The notes beneath the pieces were generated by a model that had not been told where the DNA came from, ran no database searches, and saw only the letters and a list, made by a program, of their open reading frames with translations. The position numbers and the translations under genes are program-made. This document shows positions 4,200 to 48,994 of a stretch of 64,000 nt of DNA, one piece after another (positions within the stretch are counted from its first letter, which is position 1; each line of letters begins with the position of its first letter). Source of the DNA: Scyliorhinus canicula (taxonomy: Eukaryota); assembly GCF_902713615.1 (NCBI RefSeq), contig NC_052165.1, positions 9,998,348-10,062,347 on the forward strand, given 5' to 3'.

Positions 4200-4600
4200 C
4201 GTATTTATTATTTTGTGGGACCTAGGTGTCACTGGCCTGGCCAGTATTTGTTGTCCACCCCTAATTGGACTGAGTTGCTTGGAAGGCCATTTCAAAGGGC
4301 AGTGAAGAGGCGTAGGCATTTCTGTGGGCCTGGTGGCTGGCACATGTAGGCCAGACCAGGTAAGGGTTGGAAGATTTCCTTCCCAAAAGAACATTAGTGA
4401 ACCAATTGGGTTTTTGCAATAATGAGTAATGGATCACGGTTGCATTTACTGAGAATAGCTTTCGTTCCCAGATTTCGTCAACTGAATTTGAATTTCGCCA
4501 CCTGCCCGCGTGGGATTTGAACCCATGAGCCCACAGTATAGGCCTGGGCCTCTGGATTACTAAGCGGGTGACATTACCACGATGCCATCATCTTCCCCTC
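4200..4600 (-). mobile_element. LINE 3'-end-derived repeat; related copies at about 18410-18735, 29600-29960 (-) and 31460-31655, 32480-32560 (+)
   Basis: Shared blocks GGCCAGCATTT..GCCCATCCCT, GGCCAGACCAGGTAAGG and GGGATTCGAACCC..CTCTGGATTACTAG recur across copies. Confidence 0.7.
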
Positions 4601-28566: not shown

Positions 28567-28720
28567 CAGCAGTTGGCAGCCCAACAGATTGTCTTCCAAC
28601 AGCAACTTCTCCAAATGCAACAAATCCAGCAACAGCAGCATTTGATGAACTTACAACGTCAGGGACTCATCACTATCCAGCCTGGTCAGCCCTCCCTTTC
28701 AGTCCAGTCTCTGCCACAAG
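28567..28720 (+). CDS. FOXP2: FOXP2 exon 6 equivalent, 154 nt, [51 protein letters not shown]
   Basis: Acceptor ctacAG at 28565-66 (tandem CAGs make 28570 or 28573 possible starts) and donor GTactg at 28721; phase 0/1. Confidence 0.95.
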
Positions 28721-30803
28721 GTACTGGATGGCAAATCCTACTTAAAGCTGCAATATTGTGATTTAGCTATCTATTTATCTATTGTGAATGTTTGTGTGGA
28801 ATAACATTTAAAGTACTGAAAGTATAACATGCAACAAATTTGTAGCAAATTCTGAGCATGGTCACAAATTCTGAGCATGAGTTCTATAAGAAAAGTTAAA
28901 AGTAAACATGTGCAGTAACAATAATATTGTTTCTTTCTATTGTGACAATTTCCTCCCGGAAACAGTTAGGGTGACGAAAATCCAAATAATGCAGCCCCAA
29001 CTTTGCTATGATTAGAGCTTCTATTTAATAAGGGTTTAATAAGACTCCACCTTTCAAGGAGCGTAAAATACTGGGCTTTCAATGAATTGCCAAGAAGATG
29101 AAAGTGAATAGTTATATCAATGTATCCAAATGCAGTATACAATTTTTCCAACAGTATCATATTGGAATCTTAGCGGTGAATGAGGATCTGTTAGAAGGAA
29201 ATGGGTTCACTTTCTACTTTTTTGTTCTGGTGAAGAAACTTTTGAATCAAAAAGCAAAATCGATAAATTGAATCTGATGGTACAATAATGTTGCAAACAA
29301 TTCAGTTACCAAGGCAATTTCTTATGTCTGCTGAAGTGTATCATCCAACAGTACCAGCACGTCTGCAGAAACTGTCACTGATGCTGGGACTAGAAAATCA
29401 TTTTTAATAGTTTGACATTTAAAAAAAAAATCATACAAATATGAGATTCTGGGGCAAGGTGCAATCAGACCAGTTTGCGGTAAAATGGACAGGAATAATT
29501 TCATGCTTTGGATTTTTTTCCATTTGAATGTTTTATTGGAGGCTAGGCAGAATTTTCGTTTAAGTAATGTTCATTTTCCTGAATCCTTTTCTTAAAATTC
29601 ATACTTGGGATGTGGGGGTCGCTGGCTAGGCCAGCATTTATTACCCAGCATTTATTACCCATCCCTAATTGCTCTTGTACTTAGTGGGGGGGGGGGGGGG
29701 GGGGGGGGGGGGTGGAGACAGTTAAGAGTCAACTGCATTGCTGTGTGCGTCTGGAGTCATTTGTCGGGAAGGCCGGGTATAAGGGCGGCAGATTTCCTTC
29801 CCTGATGAGCATGAGGGAACCAGAGGGATTTTTATCGTTAGACCTTTAATCCCAGACTTTTATTGAATTCAAATTTCACCATCTGCCGTGCTGGGATTCG
29901 AACCCAGGACCCTGGGTCTCTGGATTACTAGTCCAGTGATGGTACCACTATGACCGCCTTATTGTCGTCAAATTATAGTAAAATGAACTGAGCTTAAACC
30001 AGTAAATGGTCAATGATAGATTCCAACAGATGACTGCCCAGTAAAGCTAAACATAACATGTGATCACATATACTTGAGCAATCTACTGTAACCTACTGAT
30101 TTACACAATATGCATTTTACTCTCTTTTTATTCAATATGGCCAATGTTACATGGCAGTAGGCAGCCTCTACAACTGAGAAGATGGTTGAGAATGAAGCAT
30201 AAATAGTAGCGTCGTAGTGTGACTCAGAGAGTAAGGCCTGAATTTTCACTCCTGATTCAGGAGCGCAAGGTCAACTTTACAAAGCTGACTCAGGAGGAAG
30301 TGCTCCGCATGGTCTGATTTTCTTTCTGACGAGGTGGCATGGTTGTTAGCAGGAGTCAGGCCTGTAGCGTAAGGGTCTGACACAAATACGGCCTGATCTT
30401 CCAGCTGTTCATGCCGGTGGCGCACCCCCACCATGGGTTTCCCATTGGCGTGGGGTGGATTCAATGGGAATTCCCATTGACAGCGGCGAGAACAGAAGGT
30501 TCCGACACCTGCCGCCGAGAAACAGGCTGTGGGAAGCCTAAGAATCTCGCCCGTAACATTTGTGTGGGATTAAGTACAGTGCCACCCACACAGCGATGTA
30601 AGAGAACACATGACCAGCACCAAGGTGCCAGTCAAACGTTGGAGAGAGCCATGTGCACAAATAAGGAAGGAGACAACTTCCAGTTAGAACCCTTAATTAT
30701 ACATGTGTATATAGTTCTCAGAGATAATAAATAGATGCAGTTAACCTACTTAAGAGTATGAAGATTTCATTATGACCTATCAAATGATAATCTACAACAT
30801 GGT

Positions 30804-31008
30804 AAGAAGTCTTACAACCCCAGGTTAAAGTTCAACAGGTTTGTTTCAAACACTAGCTTTCGGAACACTGTTCCTTCCTCAGGTGAATCGTAAATCAGCA
30901 GTGCTCAGAAAGCTAGTGTTTGAAACAAACCTGTTGGACTTTAACCTGGTGTTGTAAGACTTCTTACTGTGCTCACCCCAGTCCAACGCCGGCATCTCCA
31001 TATCGTGG
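30804..31008. mobile_element. Penelope-derived palindrome, copy 2, 12-bp TSD
   Basis: CTACAACATGGT duplicated at 30792-803 and 31009-20. Confidence 0.8.
30851..30885 (-). ncRNA. Minimal hammerhead ribozyme motif (Penelope-type)
   Basis: The - strand reads CAC CUGAGGA A GGAAC AGU GUUCC GAAA GC UA GUG: CUGANGA and GAAA cores, 5-bp stem II, palindromic AGCU stem III, NUH triplet CUA, CAC/GUG stem I. Confidence 0.7.
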
Positions 31009-31310
31009 CTACAACATGGTGGCAGTGAATGGAAAACCTCAAACCTCGCAGAAATTGCAGGGAAAATCTAAAATTCTGGAGGACTTCAAGAAAAGTCAAA
31101 GACGCATTCTGACCTGAAGAAAAGCTTGAGAAGCAGACGTGAGGAGGACAATTATCAGGGATAAGCTCCAAAGGAAGGCTTGGAAGCTGAAGGCAGAAAT
31201 TGAAAATTCCTCAGTGCAGCAGAGAGTTCCACAGGATCACTTGGAGGTCCACCTTCAATTTCAGATTGCCGAGTCGGCAGATCCAGCAGGGGTGAGCGAA
31301 AGCTAGGATT

Positions 31311-31460
31311 CGGGCAACACGGTGGCGCAGTGGGTTCGCCCTGATGCCTCATGGAGCGAGGTCCCAGTTTTGATCCCGGCTCTGGGTCACTGTCCGTGTG
31401 GAGCTTGCACATTCTCCCCGTGTTTGTGTAGGTTTCCCCCCACAAAGATGTGCACGCTAA
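31311..31460 (+). mobile_element. Truncated HE1-like SINE
   Basis: GGGCAACACGGTGGCGCAGTGG head and TCTGGGTCACTGTCCGTGTGGAG core. Confidence 0.8.
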
Positions 31461-31654
31461 ATTTATTCAATGAATAAATCTGAAATTGAAAGCTAGTCTC
31501 AGTAATGGTAACATTGAAACATATCGTCAATTGTTATAAAAAGCCATTTGTTTCACCAATGTCCTTTAGGGAAGGAAATCTGCTGTCTTAACCTGGTCTG
31601 GCTTAAATGTGACTCCAGACACACAGCAATGTGGTTGACTCTTTACTGCCCTCT

Positions 31655-32482
31655 ATTACGAGCTGAACAGTGGTTAGGATGCTGGACCGAAACCCCAATA
31701 TTTTATTTCAGTTTTGTAAGACTGTGAGGAAAGGATACTTCATTCCAGGAGTGATTTCATCCAAAAATCGGGATATGGTGTATTAAAACAAACTTTATTA
31801 CCAACACAATATTAAAATGTCTTTTCACATCACTGAAGAAAAGTAGCTTGCCTCTTAAACAATGCTAATCAATACCCCTAAACTACTATCTTTATTTCTA
31901 CTCAAACAACAGAAAGAAAAACATCTCAGCTCTTAATCCACTTTCAAATACAGTTAGCACTCAGGAATACCTGCTGTGCAGAAATGTCTGCCTTGAGAGA
32001 GAGAGCTTTTTTGCCACTGTTTTAAAGAAAAGATCTGAATCCTGTCAGACCCATACAGAAACTCTGACTCTATTTCTTCAGTATCTGCTTCTCGGCTTAT
32101 TTCAGTAACTTTCAGCTAATCTGTCTACAGATATCTCTTTAACTGAACTGTAGTGAGAGCGAATGTTTGGCTTTTGCTCACATCTCAATCTAAAACTCAC
32201 CTGAAACTGGTTTTCTGCAAAATGCCTGATACCCTAGCTCCTCCCATTAATTAGATCATCTTCCAAAACTGAACTCCAATTAACCCCATAGGGAACTCCC
32301 CTAATCCAAACAAAACTCTATTAACCCAAGCTTTTACAGTGCCTTAATTGCACCTCCGGGTCCCAAAACCTTTCAAACCAGGATTTTTAAAAACACAACT
32401 GCAGCAGTCATACACACACGAACCCAGACTTTTAACACTTACTGCACCTTAATAAAATACATCCGAAATTCCTACTTCATCA
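31655..32482 (-). mobile_element. Probable solo LTR inserted in a LINE-tail fragment
   Basis: An insert of about 830 bp splits the LINE-tail sequence at CCTCT; it ends CTTCATCA and has AATAAA on the - strand near 31795. Confidence 0.45.
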
Positions 32483-33269
32483 AACCTCTGAAATAGCGTA
32501 GCGAGACACTCAGGTCAAGGGCAGTTATGGATGGGCAACAAATACTATTCTAGCCGTTGACACCGATATTTCATGAAAAAATAACGAAAACCATATGTCT
32601 TCAAATGAACAGGAGCAGCACCATCTTGAATTTCTGTAACATCTTACAGCTGAGTCTACAGATCAAAACTTTTAAAATATGGATCAAAACTTCAACTTAC
32701 CAGATCAGTTTGGACTTTTTAAAGCGTTGGAGCACATCACATTGAAGTAGAATGTCAGGGAAGCCCAAATTAATATCTTTTTATACTGTTTTACTGAATT
32801 TGCTGATGAAGTAATTGTAATGCAGTACATTGATGAATCCTCACCCAGGATCAACGAAATATTAAAGGCCTTTGATGATTATTTTAATCTTGAAGTTTAA
32901 GAGCGCACAGAGATTACAAAGAGACACAGAAAACTTCCTATAAAGTGCCAAAAAGGTAGAAGACAATTCTCGAGTAAACCACACAAGGAAACTTTCTAAA
33001 AGTCTTGAAACGGTATCCTTTTGTAAATCCTGACGCACTACCTGAACTGCAACAGCAGGTGACAGTACAGAGTGAGCAGCTGGCTGTGAATGAAGGAAAG
33101 CTATCTTATGAATATCTTCTGAAAATAAACAAATCCTACAAAGGGAAAATAAAATAAGGTTGGAAGAGTTTTGTATCGGAACTAAATTGGAAAATCAGAA
33201 AATCAAGATTCAAGCTGAGTATATACCTTGCAAAAGCATGTGATTCAGAAGTCATTAATGCACCACCTG

Positions 33270-34330
33270 TTCATGATCTGAACAAACTAAATTTTGAGGT
33301 GGTGCAGAGGTACAAAAAAGGTCTACAGAGCTGAAGAAGGTGACTGTATATTTGGAGGAATGCTTGGGTGAACATTACTTTTCCAAGGAGATGTATGAGG
33401 AGATAAAATCAAAAACTTAGAATGGCAAGAGGAAATAGACATTCTCACAAAAGAGTGAGGATTCTCAGAAACAATTAGAAGCACAATTTCATAATGTGAG
33501 GTTGAATGAAAGAAAAACTGATGTGTGTAGAGAATCACCTTTCATTTAAGAAAGATGATTTTGATAAGAAAAATCAGAACTAATGAGAACATTGGAATGT
33601 TGCTCACAGGAAGTAGAGCACTTGAAAGAGAACGTGAACTGCTTAAATGATGAACTTGTATGAACAAATTCAACAAAAATCATTTAAAATTGATGAACTT
33701 CAAGCATTAGAAGTATTTAGTAAGCATGGTGCAAGATGCCAGGAACTGGAGAAGGAATTGCTAGAAAGCAGAATTAACAACCAAAACTGATGAATTTCTT
33801 GAAATTTGGTCCAATCTGAAGAACATGAAGGATGGAATGCATATTGTGGAGCAGCAAATCCAGACTTTAAAAGCAGAAAAAAAATAAACTCTACAGATCA
33901 GATTGAAGATCTAACAAATTTAATGAATTGAAAGAATCTAAGGAGCAGTCAGTAATCGTGGAAGAACGATTCGCAAAATAGCTGAATGCTTATGTGAAGC
34001 TGTTGAATTTATACATGAGATCTGCAGATAACTCTGAAACAGAAACAATTCAACTTACCAGAGTTGTTGTTGAGCTGAATGAAAAGATTCATAAGCTCAA
34101 AAAACAACTGGAAAAGAAGAAAGTAATGAGACATTTGGTTAAAATTGCAAAACAAGTGGGAATGAAGGTCCCGTTGTTGAAACGTGAACTTCCACATGCG
34201 CTGTGGCGAGCGCATGGCAAAAGCTGAGGAATAAATGCTGTGGGGGTGAGCACAGCGTTCATATACCTTGGAAAAAAACTGGAGAAATTAACAAATGCCT
34301 ATCATCTCAACTGCCAAATTAACAAAGAGC
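33270..34330 (+). pseudogene. TPR: Intronless, decayed copy of the nucleoporin TPR N-terminal coiled coil
   Basis: Collinear peptides across frameshifts: KSELMRTLECCSQEVEHLKENVNCLNDEL, KIDELQALEV..ELEKELLES, AELTTKTDEFL, KESKEQSVIVEERFAK*LNAYVKLLNLYMRSADNSETETIQLTRVVVEL. Recalled human TPR: [108 protein letters not shown]. Confidence 0.8.
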
Positions 34331-34834
34331 AGTTCAATACCAAGGAATGGAAAAAGAAGATGAACAGCTATCTAGCCATCAGGAAAACCTCCAAATCAGC
34401 AGAGCCAACCATACCTTCAACAATAGTGGGTTATGTGGTAGTAGCATAAATGATGTAAATACATGGTGTGAACTAGAATAACTTGAAATACATTGGCTAA
34501 AGTCTTAGGGGAGGCATAGAATAAGGGTTTGGCATATATAGGGTTAATGACATAAAATAAAAGGAAATTCAAAGTGTCCCCGTTAATAATTTCAGTATTT
34601 AAAAAAAATATTTCCATCAATAAAAACCCATTCACTATATTTAAATTCCTACAATCCATTATAAAACAAATAATTAAATTCATAGCCCACATCAAAGACT
34701 TTCTAACCACTTGAACATGTCGATCAAACTATGAACTGACAGGCACCCCACTGTGATAATGATAGGTTATGGAACAGTCATGCAGCATGAAACTTATTAT
34801 GATAACCTTCAGGCTTCTGTCAACAAACAGAGTG

Positions 34835-35025
34835 AACACTGCCGCCTCACAACGCAGAGGACCCGGGTTTGATCCCGGTCCCGGGTCACTCTTTGTGTGG
34901 AGTTTTCACATACTCCCCATCTCTGCGTGGGTCGCACCCCCATAACCCAAAGATGCGCAGGTAGGTGGATTGGCTACGCTACAATTTCCCCCCAGTTGGC
35001 AAAAAACTTTAAATTAAAAAAAAAC
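34835..35025 (+). mobile_element. 5'-truncated HE1-like SINE
   Basis: Core GGGTCACTCTTTGTGTGGAG..., A-rich end, flanked by CAGAGTGAA repeats. Confidence 0.8.
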
Positions 35026-35571
35026 CCAGAGTGAAATAGCATGCATTGTTTTATTCAAATTGCATAATAATGGCTCCCTGACTCGGAAATGTGAAATGTA
35101 CATTGTTCACAGTTTCATCCACAGCAAACATCCCTAACTTTGCTGTCCTCTCTAAGATGATTACCTTCTAGTTTTCCCAAAACATTCTTTCCTATTTTCT
35201 GCACCATTGGTTGCAGAGTTTTTAGTCACCTCAACCGCATTCTCTGAAGCTCCCTCTCTAGTGCACGCGCTTTCGTCCCTCTCCTACATTGAAACATTTC
35301 TTAAACTCATCTGTACGATTAAGTTTTTAGTCATGCTTCTCCGTCTGTTCCATGATTATCTTTTCCCTTGTGAGCACCCTGGGACAATCTTCTTTTTCAT
35401 GGGTGCGATTTAAGTGCAAGTTGTTGTTGTTTATGTTATTAAATGTTTACTTTAGGGGTGACAAGTGGCAAATAAGAAATACACAAGTAACAGGTGATGA
35501 CCATTTCCAACAAGAGAAAAGCTGACCTTCTCTCCTTGACACTCAGTAACATTAGTATTGTTAAATATTCT

Positions 35572-36149
35572 GGGCGGGATTCTCCAACCCCCCCGCGGCC
35601 GGGCTGGCGAATTGCCGGAGAGGGGCGCCGTGAATCCTGCCCCGATGCCGGCTGCCGGATTCTCCAGCGCCAGTTTTTCAGCGGGGACGAGAATCCTGCC
35701 GCGCCAGTCGGGGGCCATTGGCCGCCCCCCCCCCCCCGACGACTCTCAGGCCCGCGATAGGCGTAAAATACACCAGGTCCGTACCGGCAGGACCTGGCTC
35801 TGCGGGCTGCCTGCGGAGTCCTCGGGGAGGGGGGGGGAAACTGTCCCTGGGGAGGGCCACCATGGTGGCCTGGCCCGCGATCAGGGCCCACCGATCCGCG
35901 GGCGGGCCTGTGCCGTGGGGGCACTCTTTCCCTCCGCGTCGGCTGATGTAATGGTCTGCCATGGCCAGCGCGGGGAAGAACCCCCCTGCCCAGGCGCTGG
36001 GATGATGCCAGCATACGCCAGCCCCGCCTGCCTGGCCCCTGATGGAGCAGAGGTTTCCGCACCTTTCGGGCGGCCCGACACCGGAGTGGTTCACGCCATT
36101 CCTCGGCGCTGGTACGGCCCACCCCGCCGGTTAGGGGAAAATCCCGCCC
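35572..36149. mobile_element. GC/CpG-rich TIR element, TSD TCT
   Basis: GGGCGGGATTCTCC...GGAAAATCCCGCCC; TCT at 35569-71 and 36150-52. Confidence 0.85.
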
Positions 36150-38859: not shown

Positions 38860-39563
38860 GGACAGGATTCTGCCGTAATCGGCGGGTGGGCAACTCCAGC
38901 GGGACGGAGTGACGTGAACCACTCCGGCGTCGGGCCTCCCCAAAGGTGCGGAATCCTCCGCACCTTCAGGGGCTAGGCCCACCCCGGAGTGGTTTGCGCC
39001 CCGCCGGCCAGCGGGAAAGGGGCTTGGCGCCACACCAACCAGCGCCGAAGGGCCTCCACGGCCGGCGCTAGTTGGCGCATGCGCAGGAGCACCAGCATGT
39101 GCTGGCGTCATCCCCGCACATGCGCAGGGGGCTTCGTTTCCGCACCGGCAATGGCGGACTGCTAGAGCCACCGGTGCGGAACAATAGAGTGCTCCCACGA
39201 CACAGGCCTGCCGGGCAGATCGGTGGGTCCCGATCGCGGGCCAGGCCACCTTGGGAGCACCTCCCGAGGCCAGATCCCCCCCCAAGAACCCCGGAGGCCG
39301 CCCGGGCCACCAGGACCTACTCCAATTTACGCCGGCGGGACTGGCAAAAAACGGGCGGGACGTCGGCCCATCGCGGGCCAGAGAATTTGGGCAGCCCCGG
39401 GGCCCATTGAGTCGAGCCAGTCCCCGCCATTCTCTGAGGCAGGCGGCACGATTTACGCCAGGCCGATTTTTGGGGGTAGGAGAATTTTGAGGACAGCGGG
39501 GGCGGGATTTACGCCGACCCCCGGCGATTCTCCAACCCAGTGGGGGTTCGGAGAATCCCGCCC
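38860..39563. mobile_element. GC/CpG-rich TIR element, TSD CCG; inverted relative to 35572-36149
   Basis: GGACAGGATTCTGCC...GGAGAATCCCGCCC; CCG at 38857-59 and 39564-66. Confidence 0.85.
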
Positions 39564-39650
39564 CCGATGTCTAATCGGTTGTACTTGTGTCCTGCACAAT
39601 CATAGACCTTGCAGTATTGTTCTGGTACACAGTTACCACAGCTCCACAGT

Positions 39651-42003: not shown

Positions 42004-42602
42004 AGGCGAAATTCTCCGACCCCCAGCAGGACAGAGATTCTCCGCCACCCGGGAAGTGGCGGGGGCAGGAATCTCACCAGTCCGATCGGAGAGGCCCCTG
42101 CAGTGATTCTCCGGCCCGGATGGGCCGAAGTCCTGCCGCTGGGAGGCCTCTCCCGCCGCCGAGGTTTGAACCACTTCTGGAACGGCGGGATTAGCGGCGC
42201 GAGCAGGCCCCGGGGTCCTGGGAGGGGCGGGGGGCGATCGAACCCTGGGGGGTGCCCCCACGGTGGCCTGGCCCGCGATCGGGGCCCCCCGATCAGACTC
42301 CGGGCCAGTGCCCTGGGTGCACTATTTTCCTCCGCGGCCGCCACGGCCTTCGCTATGGCGGAAGCGGAAGAGAACCCCACATCGCGCATGCGCCGACCGG
42401 CGAAAGCCTTTCGGCCAGCCCCGCTGCCGGGGACGCCGGTTTTTTGCACCAGTCTTCTGGTGCAAAGCCGCTCTGGCGCGGGGCAGGCCCCCAAAGGTGG
42501 GGAGAATTCCCCACCTTTGGAGAGGCCTGACCCCTGAGTGGTTGGCGCTACTCCCTCTACGCCGGGACCCTCCGTCACACCGGGTAGGGGAGAATGCCGC
42601 CC
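42004..42602. mobile_element. CpG-rich TIR element, TSD CAG
   Basis: AGGCGAAATTCTCC...GGAGAATGCCGCCC; CAG at 42001-03 and 42603-05. Confidence 0.88.
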
Positions 42603-45029: not shown

Positions 45030-45276
45030 ATACCATCAAATGGGCAGATGGGTGGCAGATTGAATTTAACCCTGAAAAGTGTGAGGTGATGCACTTTGGA
45101 AGGAGTAACACAACAAAGGAGTGATCAATGAACGGCAGGACACTAGGAAGCTCAGAGGAAGAGAGAGATCTTGGCTGTTTGCCCACAGATACCTGAAGGT
45201 GGCAGGACAGGCCAAAAGGGTTGTTAAGGAGGTACACGGGACACTTGCCTTTTTCAGTCGTGTCATAGATTATAAG

Positions 45277-45446
45277 TCATGATGTGGAGATGCCGGCATT
45301 GGACTGGGATGGGCACAGTTAAAAGTCTGACAACACCAGGTTAAAGTCCAACAGGTTTATTTGGAATCACTAGCTGTGCTACGAAAGCTAGCGATTCCAA
45401 ATAAACCTGTTGGATTTAGATTGGTGTTGTAAGACATCTTACTAGT
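45277..45446. mobile_element. Penelope-derived palindrome, copy 3 (opposite orientation, hammerhead core deleted)
   Basis: TSD TTATAAG at 45270-76 and 45447-53. Confidence 0.75.
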
Positions 45447-46022: not shown

Positions 46023-46193
46023 CCTGATTGAGGTGTATAAGATTATGAGAGGCATGGACAGGGTGGATAGGAAGCAGCTGTTCTCCTGAGTTGAAGGGTC
46101 AATAACAAGGGGGCATAATTTGAAGGCGAAAGGCAGGAAGTTTTGAGGGGGTTTGAGGAAAATAATTTTCACTCAGAGGGTGGTGAGAATCTG

Positions 46194-46922
46194 GGGCTGG
46201 ATTCTCCCCTACCCGGCGTGACGGAGGGTGCCGGCGTAGGGGAGTGGCGCCAACCACTCAGGGGTCGCGCCTCCCCAAAGGTGGGGAATTCTCCCCACCT
46301 TTGGGGGCCAGCCCCGCGCCGGAGCAGTTTGCACCAGAAGACTGGCGCAAACACCCGCCGCTGTCGGAAGCGGGGCTGGCCGAAAGGCTTTCGGCGGTCG
46401 GCGCATGCGCCGGCAGTGACGTCAGCGGCAGCTGGCCGCTGACGTCACTGCCGGCGCATGCGCGATGCGGGGTTCTCCTCCGCGTCCGCCATGGCGGAGG
46501 CCGTGGCGGCGCGGAAGGAGAAAGAGTGCCCCCACGGCACTGCCCCGCAGAGTGAGCGGGGGGCCCCGATCGCGGGCCAGGCCTCCATGGGGGCACCCCC
46601 CCGGGTCCGATCGCCCCCCGCCCCCCCAGGACCCCGGGGGCCCGCTCGCGCCGCTGAGCCCGCCGTTCCAGAGGTGGTTTAAACCTCGGCGGCGGGAGAA
46701 GGCCTCCCAGCGGCGGGACTTCGGCCCATCCGGGCCGGAGATTTGAGGTAAGTTTTTTAAAAAATGAAATCCCGCCGGCGCCAGCTGTTTTCACAGGCTG
46801 CCGGCGGGATTTACACAACGCCGGTTTATGACCGGCGGGAGAATTACAAACCCTGCGGGAGCGGAAATAACGCCGCTTCCCGCCTATTCTCCGACCCTGC
46901 GTGGGGTCGGAGAATTTCGCCC
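46194..46922. mobile_element. CpG-rich TIR element, TSD CTG; inverted close relative of 42004-42602
   Basis: GGGCTGGATTCTCC...GGAGAATTTCGCCC; removing it restores the LINE text GTGAGAATCTGGAGTGCACTG. Confidence 0.9.
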
Positions 46923-48170: not shown

Positions 48171-48994
48171 GGCCGGGATTCTCCGACCCCGCGTGGGGTC
48201 CGACGCCGGCTCCCTGATTCTCCAGCGGCGATTTTTGGGCACCCGTGGGATCGCCGCCGCGCCAGTCGGGGGCCGTTGAAAGTGCTCCCCGGCGATTCTC
48301 CGGGCCTCAACGGGCCGAGTGGCCACTGGGTTCGGCCAAGTCCTGCCGGCACGGGTTACGTATGGTTCCACCCTGCGGGACCTCGCCGTTCTGTCTGCGG
48401 GGGCTGTCCTGGTGTAGGGGCGGGGGTTCAGATCCCCGGGGCGCCTCCACGGTGGCCTGGTCCATGATCGGGGCCTACGGATCAGCAGACGGGCTGGTTC
48501 CGTGGTGGCCTATGTTCCTCCGCGCTGGGCCCCCGTAGGGCTCCACCATATTGCCGGGGCGGAGACAGGAACCCACCCGCATGCGCGAACACGCGCCGGC
48601 CGCGGCGTGCCGGTTTTCGAGTGCCGGAGCTGCGGAGACCACTCCAGCAACATATTAGCCCCTGGGAAGTGGTGGGTAGCTGCCAGGTGAAGCCCACTTT
48701 TCATTTTTTTTTATTAATAAAAATTTTGATTACCCAATTATTTTTTCCAATTAAGGGACAATTTAGAATGGCCAATCCACCTACGCTGTACATTTTTGGG
48801 TTGTGGGGGCGAAACCCACGCAGACACGGGGAGAATGTGCAAACTCCACATGGACAGTGACCCAGAGCCGGGATCGAACCTGGGACCTCAGCGCCGTGAG
48901 GCAGCTGTGCTAACCACTAGGCCACCGTGCTGCCCTGAAGCCCACTTTTCATGCCGGCTTCGGAACTTGGCCGCAGGATTGGAGAATCCTGGCC
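48171..48994. mobile_element. CpG-rich TIR element (TSD TAT) with a nested - strand SINE at 48705-48935
   Basis: GGCCGGGATTCTCC...GGAGAATCCTGGCC; the SINE has a perfect 17-bp TSD TGAAGCCCACTTTTCAT at 48688-704 and 48936-952. Confidence 0.88.

What the first reader, a model, noticed from the sequence alone, without database searches (positions are those of the whole stretch)
30552..34450. LTR-retrotransposon-like element carrying a Gag-like segment followed by a captured TPR coiled coil
On one strand the order is: LTR-like segment, PBS-like TGGTGGCAG, a Gypsy gag-like peptide (QINIFLYC..ADEV..IDE..EILKAFDDYF, 32760-891), then about 1 kb of intronless sequence collinear with the TPR N-terminus, with no pol. 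The TPR part has clean internal deletions (VVEL joined to NEKIHKLKKQL joined to EKKKVMRHLVKIAKQV..PLLKR). It is far more diverged at protein level than expected for a simple recent retrocopy of a conserved gene. Inference: a non-autonomous LTR family captured TPR mRNA and may once have expressed a Gag-TPR fusion. This matters because the TPR N-terminus is a dimerising coiled coil (the fusion partner in TPR-MET) from the nuclear basket, which gates export of unspliced RNA. This copy is dead (stops and frameshifts).
Basis: partly seen in the sequence, partly recalled or inferred. Interest (0 to 1): 0.78.

Follow-up and report, generated by a model that had tools for sequence, protein, structure and literature searches.

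The report
Dead TPR-derived repeat copy in shark
An intron of a shark FOXP2 gene holds a dead member of an old repeat family (dozens of copies or more) built around an intron-free, shortened copy of the front end of the nuclear-pore basket gene TPR; the proposed LTR and primer site are unrelated repeats, and the "Gag" piece could not be confirmed.

Summary
The TPR-like stretch is real. It is about 1.6 kb of intron-free coiled-coil coding sequence (32898-34480, + strand), broken by stops and frameshifts, in FOXP2 intron 6 of a shark.

It is not a lone processed pseudogene.
- **Many copies:** contigs from three shark species lay many diverged copies (80-87% alike) over 32636-34812.
- **Shared deletions:** these copies, and a 153-aa Scyliorhinus torazame hypothetical protein (the only database relative, E 2.4e-13), cross both internal deletion junctions without a gap.
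- **Age:** a sister species holds this copy at the same place, about 5.6% diverged.

The LTR part of the model fails for this copy.
- The "LTR-like" segment is a roughly 200-bp palindromic repeat found twice more in the window.
- The "PBS" 9-mer occurs at chance frequency.
- Three unrelated repeats lie between the "PBS" and the "gag".
- No LTR pair exists.

The gag-like ORF is in frame with TPR but has no Pfam, PDB or Atlas support.

TPR ancestry rests on my own knowledge of TPR; no tool could fetch a TPR protein.

The scan found this family before on other DNA of this genome (s1-203758, s1-207488).

The parts
32606..32897 (+). 5' non-TPR part of the repeat unit. It starts just after the tail of repeat R.
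   Evidence: R-family similarity ends at about 32603-32605. Paralogous contigs are laid from bin 32636 onward in all four runs.
32751..32897 (+). 'Gag-like' 49-codon ORF, in the same frame as the start of the TPR-like part, with one stop codon (32898-32900) between them.
   Evidence: No gag family in Pfam, none in PDB, no usable Atlas hit. The bin 32762-32887 is multi-copy.
32898..34480 (+). Intron-free, decayed copy of a coiled-coil coding sequence. It is collinear with about residues 8-545 of nucleoprotein TPR (own knowledge of TPR). At least 5 frame changes and at least 6 in-frame stops.
   Evidence: Paralogue P0001 aligns to 33810-34215 (E 2.4e-13). Many diverged contigs lie here in three species.
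34075..34113 (+). The two internal deletion junctions relative to TPR, at about 34078 and about 34111. Both keep the reading frame.
   Evidence: P0001 crosses both without a gap. Organism C contigs 13-16 and organism A contig 23 span 34023-34199 with 1-7 gap letters.
33107..33203 (+). 97 bases present in this copy but skipped in other copies of the family.
   Evidence: Joint 33106>33204 is seen in 3, 1, 4 and 5 contigs of the four runs.
33266..33391 (+). Segment where almost only the locus's own contigs are laid. It is either private to this copy's lineage or too diverged to match other copies.
   Evidence: 5.07 in X1 (the level of one locus contig) and 0 in X2. It is present in the organism B orthologue (contig 29).
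34481..34830 (+). 3' non-TPR part of the repeat unit. Holds a purine-rich run at 34507-34527, an AATAAA-like signal at 34556 and an A8 run at 34607-34614.
   Evidence: Read from the sequence. Paralogous contigs lie here (13, 22 and 32 contigs show a variant at 34507). The last bin is the most populated. A contig of organism C resumes at 34812.
31465..31653 (+). Flank, not part of the unit: 5' half of dispersed repeat R.
   Evidence: Copies at 4296-4475, 18464-18579 and 29719-29835. Joints 31643>32507 and similar show R copies without the insert.
   Evidence: depth table and joints.
32465..32605 (+). Flank: 3' half and A-rich tail of repeat R, abutting the unit.
   Evidence: Matches 4205-4322 and 18384-18461, which are contiguous with the other half of R in those copies.
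31298..31462 (+). Flank: tRNA-derived SINE copy.
   Evidence: At least 8 copies in the window.
34832..35010 (+). Flank: SINE copy of the same kind, bounding the unit on the 3' side.
30802..31008 (.).
   Evidence: Rfam gives only sub-threshold miRNA-hairpin matches.
31017..31025 (+).
   Evidence: 2 matches in the window against 0.92 expected by chance.

Best explanation
Bases 32606-34830 are a dead copy of an old dispersed repeat family of sharks. The core of the family is a reverse-transcribed (intron-free) copy of the first 1.6 kb or so of the TPR coding sequence. That core carries two in-frame internal deletions and lies between short non-TPR sequences.

Shown:
- The stretch is intron-free and broken.
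- Many diverged copies exist in three species.
- The deletions are common to the copies, so they arose once, before amplification.
- This copy sat in FOXP2 intron 6 before organisms A and B split.
- The claimed LTR and PBS are unrelated or chance features.

Inferred:
- The source gene is TPR. This rests on my own knowledge of the TPR sequence.
- The fragment was captured on RNA by a retroelement and then copied in trans as a non-autonomous unit.

My preferred mechanism, at about 40-45%, is template-switch capture by an LTR retrotransposon (LTR-mediated retroposition, PMC5131818). In that case this copy has lost its LTRs. A LINE-driven route comes next, at about 30%. Nothing indicates present function.
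For: **Intron-free and decayed:**

**Multi-copy:**
- Distinct contigs at 80-87% likeness lie over the stretch. Examples are X13 records 9-16 and X2 records 21 and 23.
- Variant letters are carried by 13 (A), 22 (B) and 32 (C) different contigs at 34507, and by 6 to 18 contigs at 33178.
- Locus contigs of organism A are 98-100% alike.

**Shared deletions:** P0001 (S. torazame GCB67842.1) is the only relative among 1.84 billion representatives. It aligns without a gap across both junctions at 47-54% identity. Contigs of organisms A and C span the junctions too.

**Orthologue:** a 1279-nt contig of organism B covers 32518-33793 with 71 mismatches and 15 gap letters, bridging the R tail into the unit.

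**Host part 3'-truncated with non-TPR family sequence on both sides:**. This matches the features listed for LTR-mediated retrocopies and their secondary spread (PMC5131818).

**Context:** FOXP2-type exons at 26143-26318 and 28567-28720.

**Leads from the scan:** other windows of this genome were noted to hold intron-free TPR-like copies.
Against: - **TPR ancestry lacks a significant tool result.** No TPR protein could be fetched, because of the length filter and because PDB holds only residues 1-142.
- **Pfam hints are weak.** They are Nucleoprot-TPR at E 0.038 for one of 14 pieces, and TPR_MLP1_2 at E 0.0015 for P0001, listed among generic coiled-coil families.
- **The read data are Logan contigs.** Summed depth is not copy number, and short contigs do not show that the gag-like, TPR-like and 3' parts are joined in other copies.
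- **No hallmark of any transposon class was found.** There is no LTR pair, terminal inverted repeat, target-site duplication or clear poly-A.
Confidence: 0.65

Rival explanations
1. One reading: a non-autonomous LTR retrotransposon whose Gag N-terminal part was fused in frame to TPR residues from about 8 onward, and which once expressed a Gag-TPR protein.
For: - The gag-like ORF is in the same frame as the TPR start, with one stop between.
- From my own knowledge, its pattern recalls the N-terminal region of metazoan Ty3/Pao Gag proteins.
- The gag-like bin is multi-copy at a level like the TPR part.
- The host part is strongly 3'-truncated, without poly-A at its end.
- A purine-rich run followed by TG lies at 34507-34532, and the 3'-most bin is the most populated.
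- The general mechanism is known in animals (PMC5131818).
Against: - No LTR pair anywhere in the window.
- The named LTR is a palindromic repeat and the named PBS is at chance frequency.
- No gag hit in Pfam, PDB or the Atlas.
- The non-TPR/TPR boundary lies at about TPR codon 8, so the upstream 290 bases could simply be the TPR 5' UTR.
- No intact copy or expression has been seen.
Confidence: 0.3
2. A LINE-driven family. A short, alternatively spliced and prematurely polyadenylated TPR transcript (5' UTR, first exons, read-through into an intron) was retrocopied. A transcribed master copy was then re-copied many times by LINE machinery.
For: - No LTRs.
- The unit abuts the A-rich tail of another retroposon.
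- A GTAAAT motif sits where TPR likeness ends (about 34457). AATAAA-like signals and an A8 run follow at 34556-34614.
- Laid contigs tend to increase toward the 3' end.
- Another agent reported LINE template-switch chimeras in this genome (s1-278437; a lead only).
Against: - Family contigs continue beyond the A8 run to about 34812.
- No target-site duplication is recognisable.
- In-frame deletions and a common 3' end would require one particular isoform.
- Dozens to hundreds of copies from one gene is unusual for plain processed pseudogenes.
Confidence: 0.25
3. An ordinary single processed pseudogene of TPR that happened to land among repeats.
For: It is intron-free, decayed and sits in an intron.
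Against: - Many diverged copies in three species share the same deletions.
- The 3' part of the mRNA and a poly-A tail are missing.
Confidence: 0.03
4. Not TPR-derived: the coiled coil is a transposon's own protein (for example an ORF1 or Gag coiled coil), and the likeness to TPR is compositional.
For: - No significant tool match to TPR.
- P0001 hits many generic coiled-coil families at similar weak E-values.
- The Atlas returns tropomyosin-like clusters.
Against: - From my own knowledge, the collinear match to TPR from about residue 8 to 545 includes a run of about 19 identities in 32 residues around 33982-34077. That is too specific for composition alone.
- Two independent readers of other copies reached the same gene (leads only).
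Confidence: 0.07

Closest known systems
LTR-mediated retroposition and its secondary spread as non-autonomous LTR elements (Tan et al. 2016, PMC5131818)
   Same: - A partial host retrocopy with strong 3' truncation.
- No poly-A at the end of the host part.
- Non-host repeat sequence on both sides.
- A possible in-frame junction.
- Several dispersed copies sharing one structure.
   Different: - No LTRs, PBS or recognisable retrotransposon ORF could be shown here.
- Copy number is far higher (dozens to hundreds, against 2-3 insertion sites in the paper).
- The family is old and is shared by several shark species.
Retroviral transduction of host genes (acutely transforming retroviruses with Gag-onc fusions)
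   Same: A 5' viral gag part fused in frame to a spliced, truncated and internally deleted host cDNA would be the same architecture.
   Different: - Those are single defective viruses, not germ-line families.
- Gag identity is unproven here.
- No kinase or growth gene is involved.
L1/LINE-made processed pseudogenes and retrogene-derived repeat families
   Same: RNA-derived, intron-free, dead and dispersed.
   Different: - The host part keeps its 5' end and lacks the 3' end and poly-A.
- The copies share internal deletions and flanking non-host sequence.
Gene-fragment carriers among DNA transposons (Pack-MULEs, Helitrons)
   Same: A host gene fragment amplified as passenger of a mobile element.
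   Different: - Those capture genomic DNA with its introns.
- No terminal inverted repeats or Helitron ends are found here.

Membership tests
Copy derived from nucleoprotein TPR (N-terminal coiled coil) | Significant collinear protein similarity to TPR | tested here: inconclusive
   - No TPR protein could be retrieved: word searches are limited by length.
- PDB holds only residues 1-142 and gave no hit.
- Pfam gave Nucleoprot-TPR at E 0.038 for 33568-33660 and TPR_MLP1_2 at E 0.0015 for P0001. Both are below the cut-offs.
- The assignment rests on my own knowledge of the vertebrate TPR sequence.
Copy derived from nucleoprotein TPR (N-terminal coiled coil) | Spliced (intron-free) arrangement of what are many exons in the gene | tested here: met
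   The coding remnant is continuous over 32898-34480, with only small frame shifts. The exon count of TPR is from general knowledge.
LTR retrotransposon / LTR-mediated retrocopy | Two long terminal direct repeats flanking the unit | tested here: not met
   No direct repeat pair was found in 26-40 kb or in the whole window for either flank. The named LTR is a palindromic dispersed repeat.
LTR retrotransposon / LTR-mediated retrocopy | Primer-binding site next to the 5' LTR | tested here: not met
   The 9-mer occurs at chance frequency. It lies 1.7 kb upstream of the gag-like ORF, with three unrelated repeats between them.
LTR retrotransposon / LTR-mediated retrocopy | Flanking sequence recognisable as retrotransposon gag or pol | tested here: inconclusive
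   No hit in Pfam, PDB or the Atlas for 32751-32897. The piece is short and decayed, and no transposon library was available.
LTR retrotransposon / LTR-mediated retrocopy | Partial host retrocopy with 3' truncation and no poly-A or TSD at its ends | tested here: met
   TPR likeness ends at about 34480, roughly codon 545, with no A-run there. Target-site duplications cannot be judged because other repeats occupy the flanks.
LTR retrotransposon / LTR-mediated retrocopy | Several dispersed copies that share one structure (secondary spread) | tested here: met
   Dispersal to other scaffolds is known only from earlier scan notes.
LINE-made processed pseudogene | Complete 3' end of the mRNA with poly-A tail and target-site duplication | tested here: not met
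   The 3' three quarters of the TPR coding sequence are absent. Only an A8 run lies 130 bases past the end of TPR likeness, and family contigs continue beyond it.

The most novel reading that the evidence does not exclude
A shark retroelement once made an in-frame fusion of a Gag N-terminal part with the dimerising N-terminal coiled coil of the nuclear-basket protein TPR. This passenger helped the element (particle assembly, docking at the pore, or escape of unspliced RNA from basket retention), which would explain why the chimera out-multiplied its parent to hundreds of copies across species.
Probability: 0.08. Interest if true: 0.75.

Novelty: new member of a known kind. Interest (0 to 1): 0.4.

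Why it matters
Host-gene fragments captured on RNA and then multiplied as passengers of retroelements are known in flies, fish, birds and mammals, usually at one to a few copies. A family of dozens to hundreds of copies carrying the TPR dimerisation coiled coil, shared by several shark species, would be an unusually successful example.

It would also be a useful marker family for shark genome annotation. At least one copy is already annotated as a hypothetical protein in S. torazame.

If the upstream ORF proved to be Gag, it would be a germ-line analogue of Gag-onc fusions involving a nuclear-pore protein. As it stands this copy is a dead fossil, with no sign of effect on FOXP2.

Tried and rejected
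**Tried without result**
- PDB sequence searches with six pieces and with P0001 gave only chance coiled-coil hits and no TPR chain.
- Word-index protein searches found P0001 itself or nothing. One search was a parameter slip.
- The ESM Atlas gave generic coiled-coil clusters for P0001 and no usable hit for the gag-like ORF.
- Fetching the S. torazame locus of P0001 failed: no DNA was served and no neighbouring genes were listed.
- Rfam and tRNA scans of 29500-36000 gave only sub-threshold hairpin hits, no hammerhead family and no tRNA.
- Searches for LTRs, terminal inverted repeats and target-site duplications around the unit found none.
- Pfam on ten ORFs of 150 aa or more in the window, five of them within 10 kb of the stretch, found nothing.
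- Looking for printed TPR peptides in papers, to replace my memory of the sequence, found none.
- The bacterial promoter/terminator scan is irrelevant here.

**Rejected explanations**
- A single ordinary processed pseudogene is contradicted.
- A Helitron or TIR transposon carrier is unlikely, because no such ends were found and the fragment is spliced.

- I did not read the broken frame through stops.
- I built no consensus.
Full report
**Context.** The window is shark DNA. Bases 26143-26318 encode a FOXP2-type poly-glutamine exon ([10 protein letters not shown]...HPGKQSKE). Bases 28567-28720 encode the next exon. This agrees with first-reader notes on the same window. The finding therefore lies in FOXP2 intron 6, on the gene's strand. 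The intron is packed with dispersed repeats.

**Observation.** Translating 32500-34600 in three frames shows the quoted 49-codon open stretch at 32751-32897. One stop codon follows, and then, in the same frame, a coiled-coil coding remnant begins. The remnant can be followed through frames 0, 2, 1, 2, 0, 1 to about 34480, with at least six in-frame stops. No intron-like interruption occurs. From my own knowledge of vertebrate TPR, the remnant is collinear with residues from about 8 to about 545. The clearest block is 33982-34077, with roughly 19 of 32 residues identical to the human protein as I recall it.

**Why TPR ancestry stays a knowledge-based inference.** I could not confirm TPR with a tool.
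- PDB holds only TPR 1-142, and none of the pieces hit it.
- The word-index search cannot see proteins over 1.75 times the query length.
- Pfam gave only sub-threshold hints: Nucleoprot-TPR at E 0.038 for one of 14 pieces, and TPR_MLP1_2 at E 0.0015 for the catshark relative.

I rate TPR ancestry at about 0.9.

**The claimed LTR and PBS.**
- Bases 30802-31008 are a palindrome with 69-nt arms, 94% complementary. Copies at 20464-20656 and 45275-45443 have nothing TPR-like next to them. Rfam sees only weak miRNA-hairpin likeness.
- The 9-mer TGGTGGCAG (31017-31025) occurs twice in the window, against 0.92 expected.
- Three unrelated repeats lie between it and the gag-like ORF:
  - a tRNA-derived SINE (31298-31462);
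  - a dispersed repeat R, split into 31465-31653 and 32465-32605, halves that are contiguous in R copies at 4205-4475 and 18384-18579;
  - an 810-bp very high-copy insert nested in R.
- No direct repeat pairs with either flank of the unit anywhere in the window.
- No terminal inverted repeats exist.
- No ORF of 150 aa or more in the window has a Pfam domain.

**One copy or many.** The exhaustive protein search with the 81-codon piece found a single relative among 1.84 billion representatives. It is P0001, a 153-aa 'hypothetical protein' of Scyliorhinus torazame (GCB67842.1), with E 2.4e-13 and 54% identity. It aligns to 33810-34215 without any gap, so it has the same two deletions.

I then laid Logan contigs of four DNA runs on 31250-35000 at 80% likeness.
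- **Organism A.** This is the window's species: its locus contigs are 98-100% alike.
- **Organism B.** One 1279-nt contig covers 32518-33793 with 71 mismatches and 15 gap letters. This is the same insertion at the same place, next to the R tail, about 5.6% diverged.
- **Paralogous contigs.** Beyond these, many different contigs at 80-87% likeness lie over 32636-34812 in A, B and a third species, C.
  - Five separate C contigs lie over 33922-34199, and three over 32986-33225.
  - Two A contigs (records 21 and 23) are laid at about 81% likeness.
  - One variant letter at 34507 is carried by 13, 5, 22 and 32 contigs in the four runs.
  - Four of the C contigs and one A contig span both deletion junctions with only 1-7 gap letters.
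- **Summed depth.** Summed contig depth is tens of times the single-locus level in A and B, and hundreds of times in C. The tool warns that this figure is not a copy number.
- **Differences between copies.** Other copies lack 33107-33203 (a 97-nt joint seen in all runs). Bases 33266-33391 are laid almost only by the locus's own contigs.

Earlier notes of this scan, on other scaffolds of the same genome, report intron-free TPR-like copies and 'dozens of copies' (s1-203758 and s1-207488). I treated these as leads, and bears them out. If organism A is a Scyliorhinus species, as those notes suggest, then P0001 at 54% identity is a paralogue and not the orthologue.

**Reading.** A single, already deleted, spliced 5' fragment of TPR was amplified to many dispersed copies before these sharks diverged. 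The copy in this window is a decayed member.

**How the family spread is not shown.**

For an LTR-type capture by template switching:
- The host part keeps its 5' end but loses three quarters of its 3' end, with no poly-A there.
- Non-TPR family sequence lies on both sides.
- The upstream ORF is in frame with the TPR start.
- The 3'-most bin is the most populated.
- Exactly this architecture, including secondary spread as a non-autonomous element, is described in animals (PMC5131818).

Against it:
- No LTR, PBS or recognisable gag could be shown.
- The boundary between non-TPR and TPR sequence falls at about codon 8. The upstream 290 bases could therefore be nothing more than the TPR 5' UTR, with a chance ORF. 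A 49-codon open stretch is unremarkable among the 62 ORFs of 30 aa or more in these 6 kb.

For the LINE route, starting from a short, prematurely polyadenylated isoform:
- A GTAAAT motif sits where TPR likeness ends.
- AATAAA-like signals and an A8 run follow at 34556-34614.
- The unit abuts an A-rich retroposon tail.

Against the LINE route, family contigs continue past the A-run.

My odds are about 40-45% LTR-type, 30% LINE-driven, and the rest other or unknown.

**Novelty and limits.** This is a new member of a known kind: a retro-captured host gene fragment multiplied as a transposon passenger. It is notable for its copy number, its age and the identity of the passenger. The scan has already met the family elsewhere in this genome.

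Steps I did not take:
- I did not build a consensus of the family or a repaired frame (referred).
- I did not read the frame through its stops by reference.

Noticed in passing
window 30802-31008 (also 20464-20656, 45275-45443): A palindromic repeat of about 200 bp (69-nt arms, 94% complementary), present three times in the window. Another first-reader note calls part of it a minimal hammerhead ribozyme. Rfam at E up to 1 gave only sub-threshold miRNA-hairpin matches and no hammerhead family.
   Followed up: partly
window 31654-32464: An 810-bp repeat nested inside another repeat.
   Followed up: partly
window 31465-31653 + 32465-32605; copies at 4205-4475, 18384-18579, 29647-29835: Dispersed repeat 'R' with an A-rich tail. 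It is very abundant in all three shark species. Loose ends show that full copies extend further 5' than this one.
   Followed up: partly
P0001 (GCB67842.1, Scyliorhinus torazame): An annotated 153-aa 'hypothetical protein' is most likely an open remnant of one copy of this TPR-derived repeat family, not a gene. No other gene is called within 10 kb of it.
   Followed up: partly
window 35561-36149 (also about 39095-39574, 46181-46681, 42170-42602, 48200-48580, 52184-52444): A GC-rich repeat with at least six copies in the window. It carries long ORFs on both strands that have no Pfam domain.
   Followed up: partly
window 26143-26318 and 28567-28720: FOXP2-type exons: the poly-glutamine exon with about 35 Q, and the following Q-rich exon, which has a GT donor at 28721.
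   Followed up: no
window 16849-16980: A run of 132 N (gap or masked).
   Followed up: no
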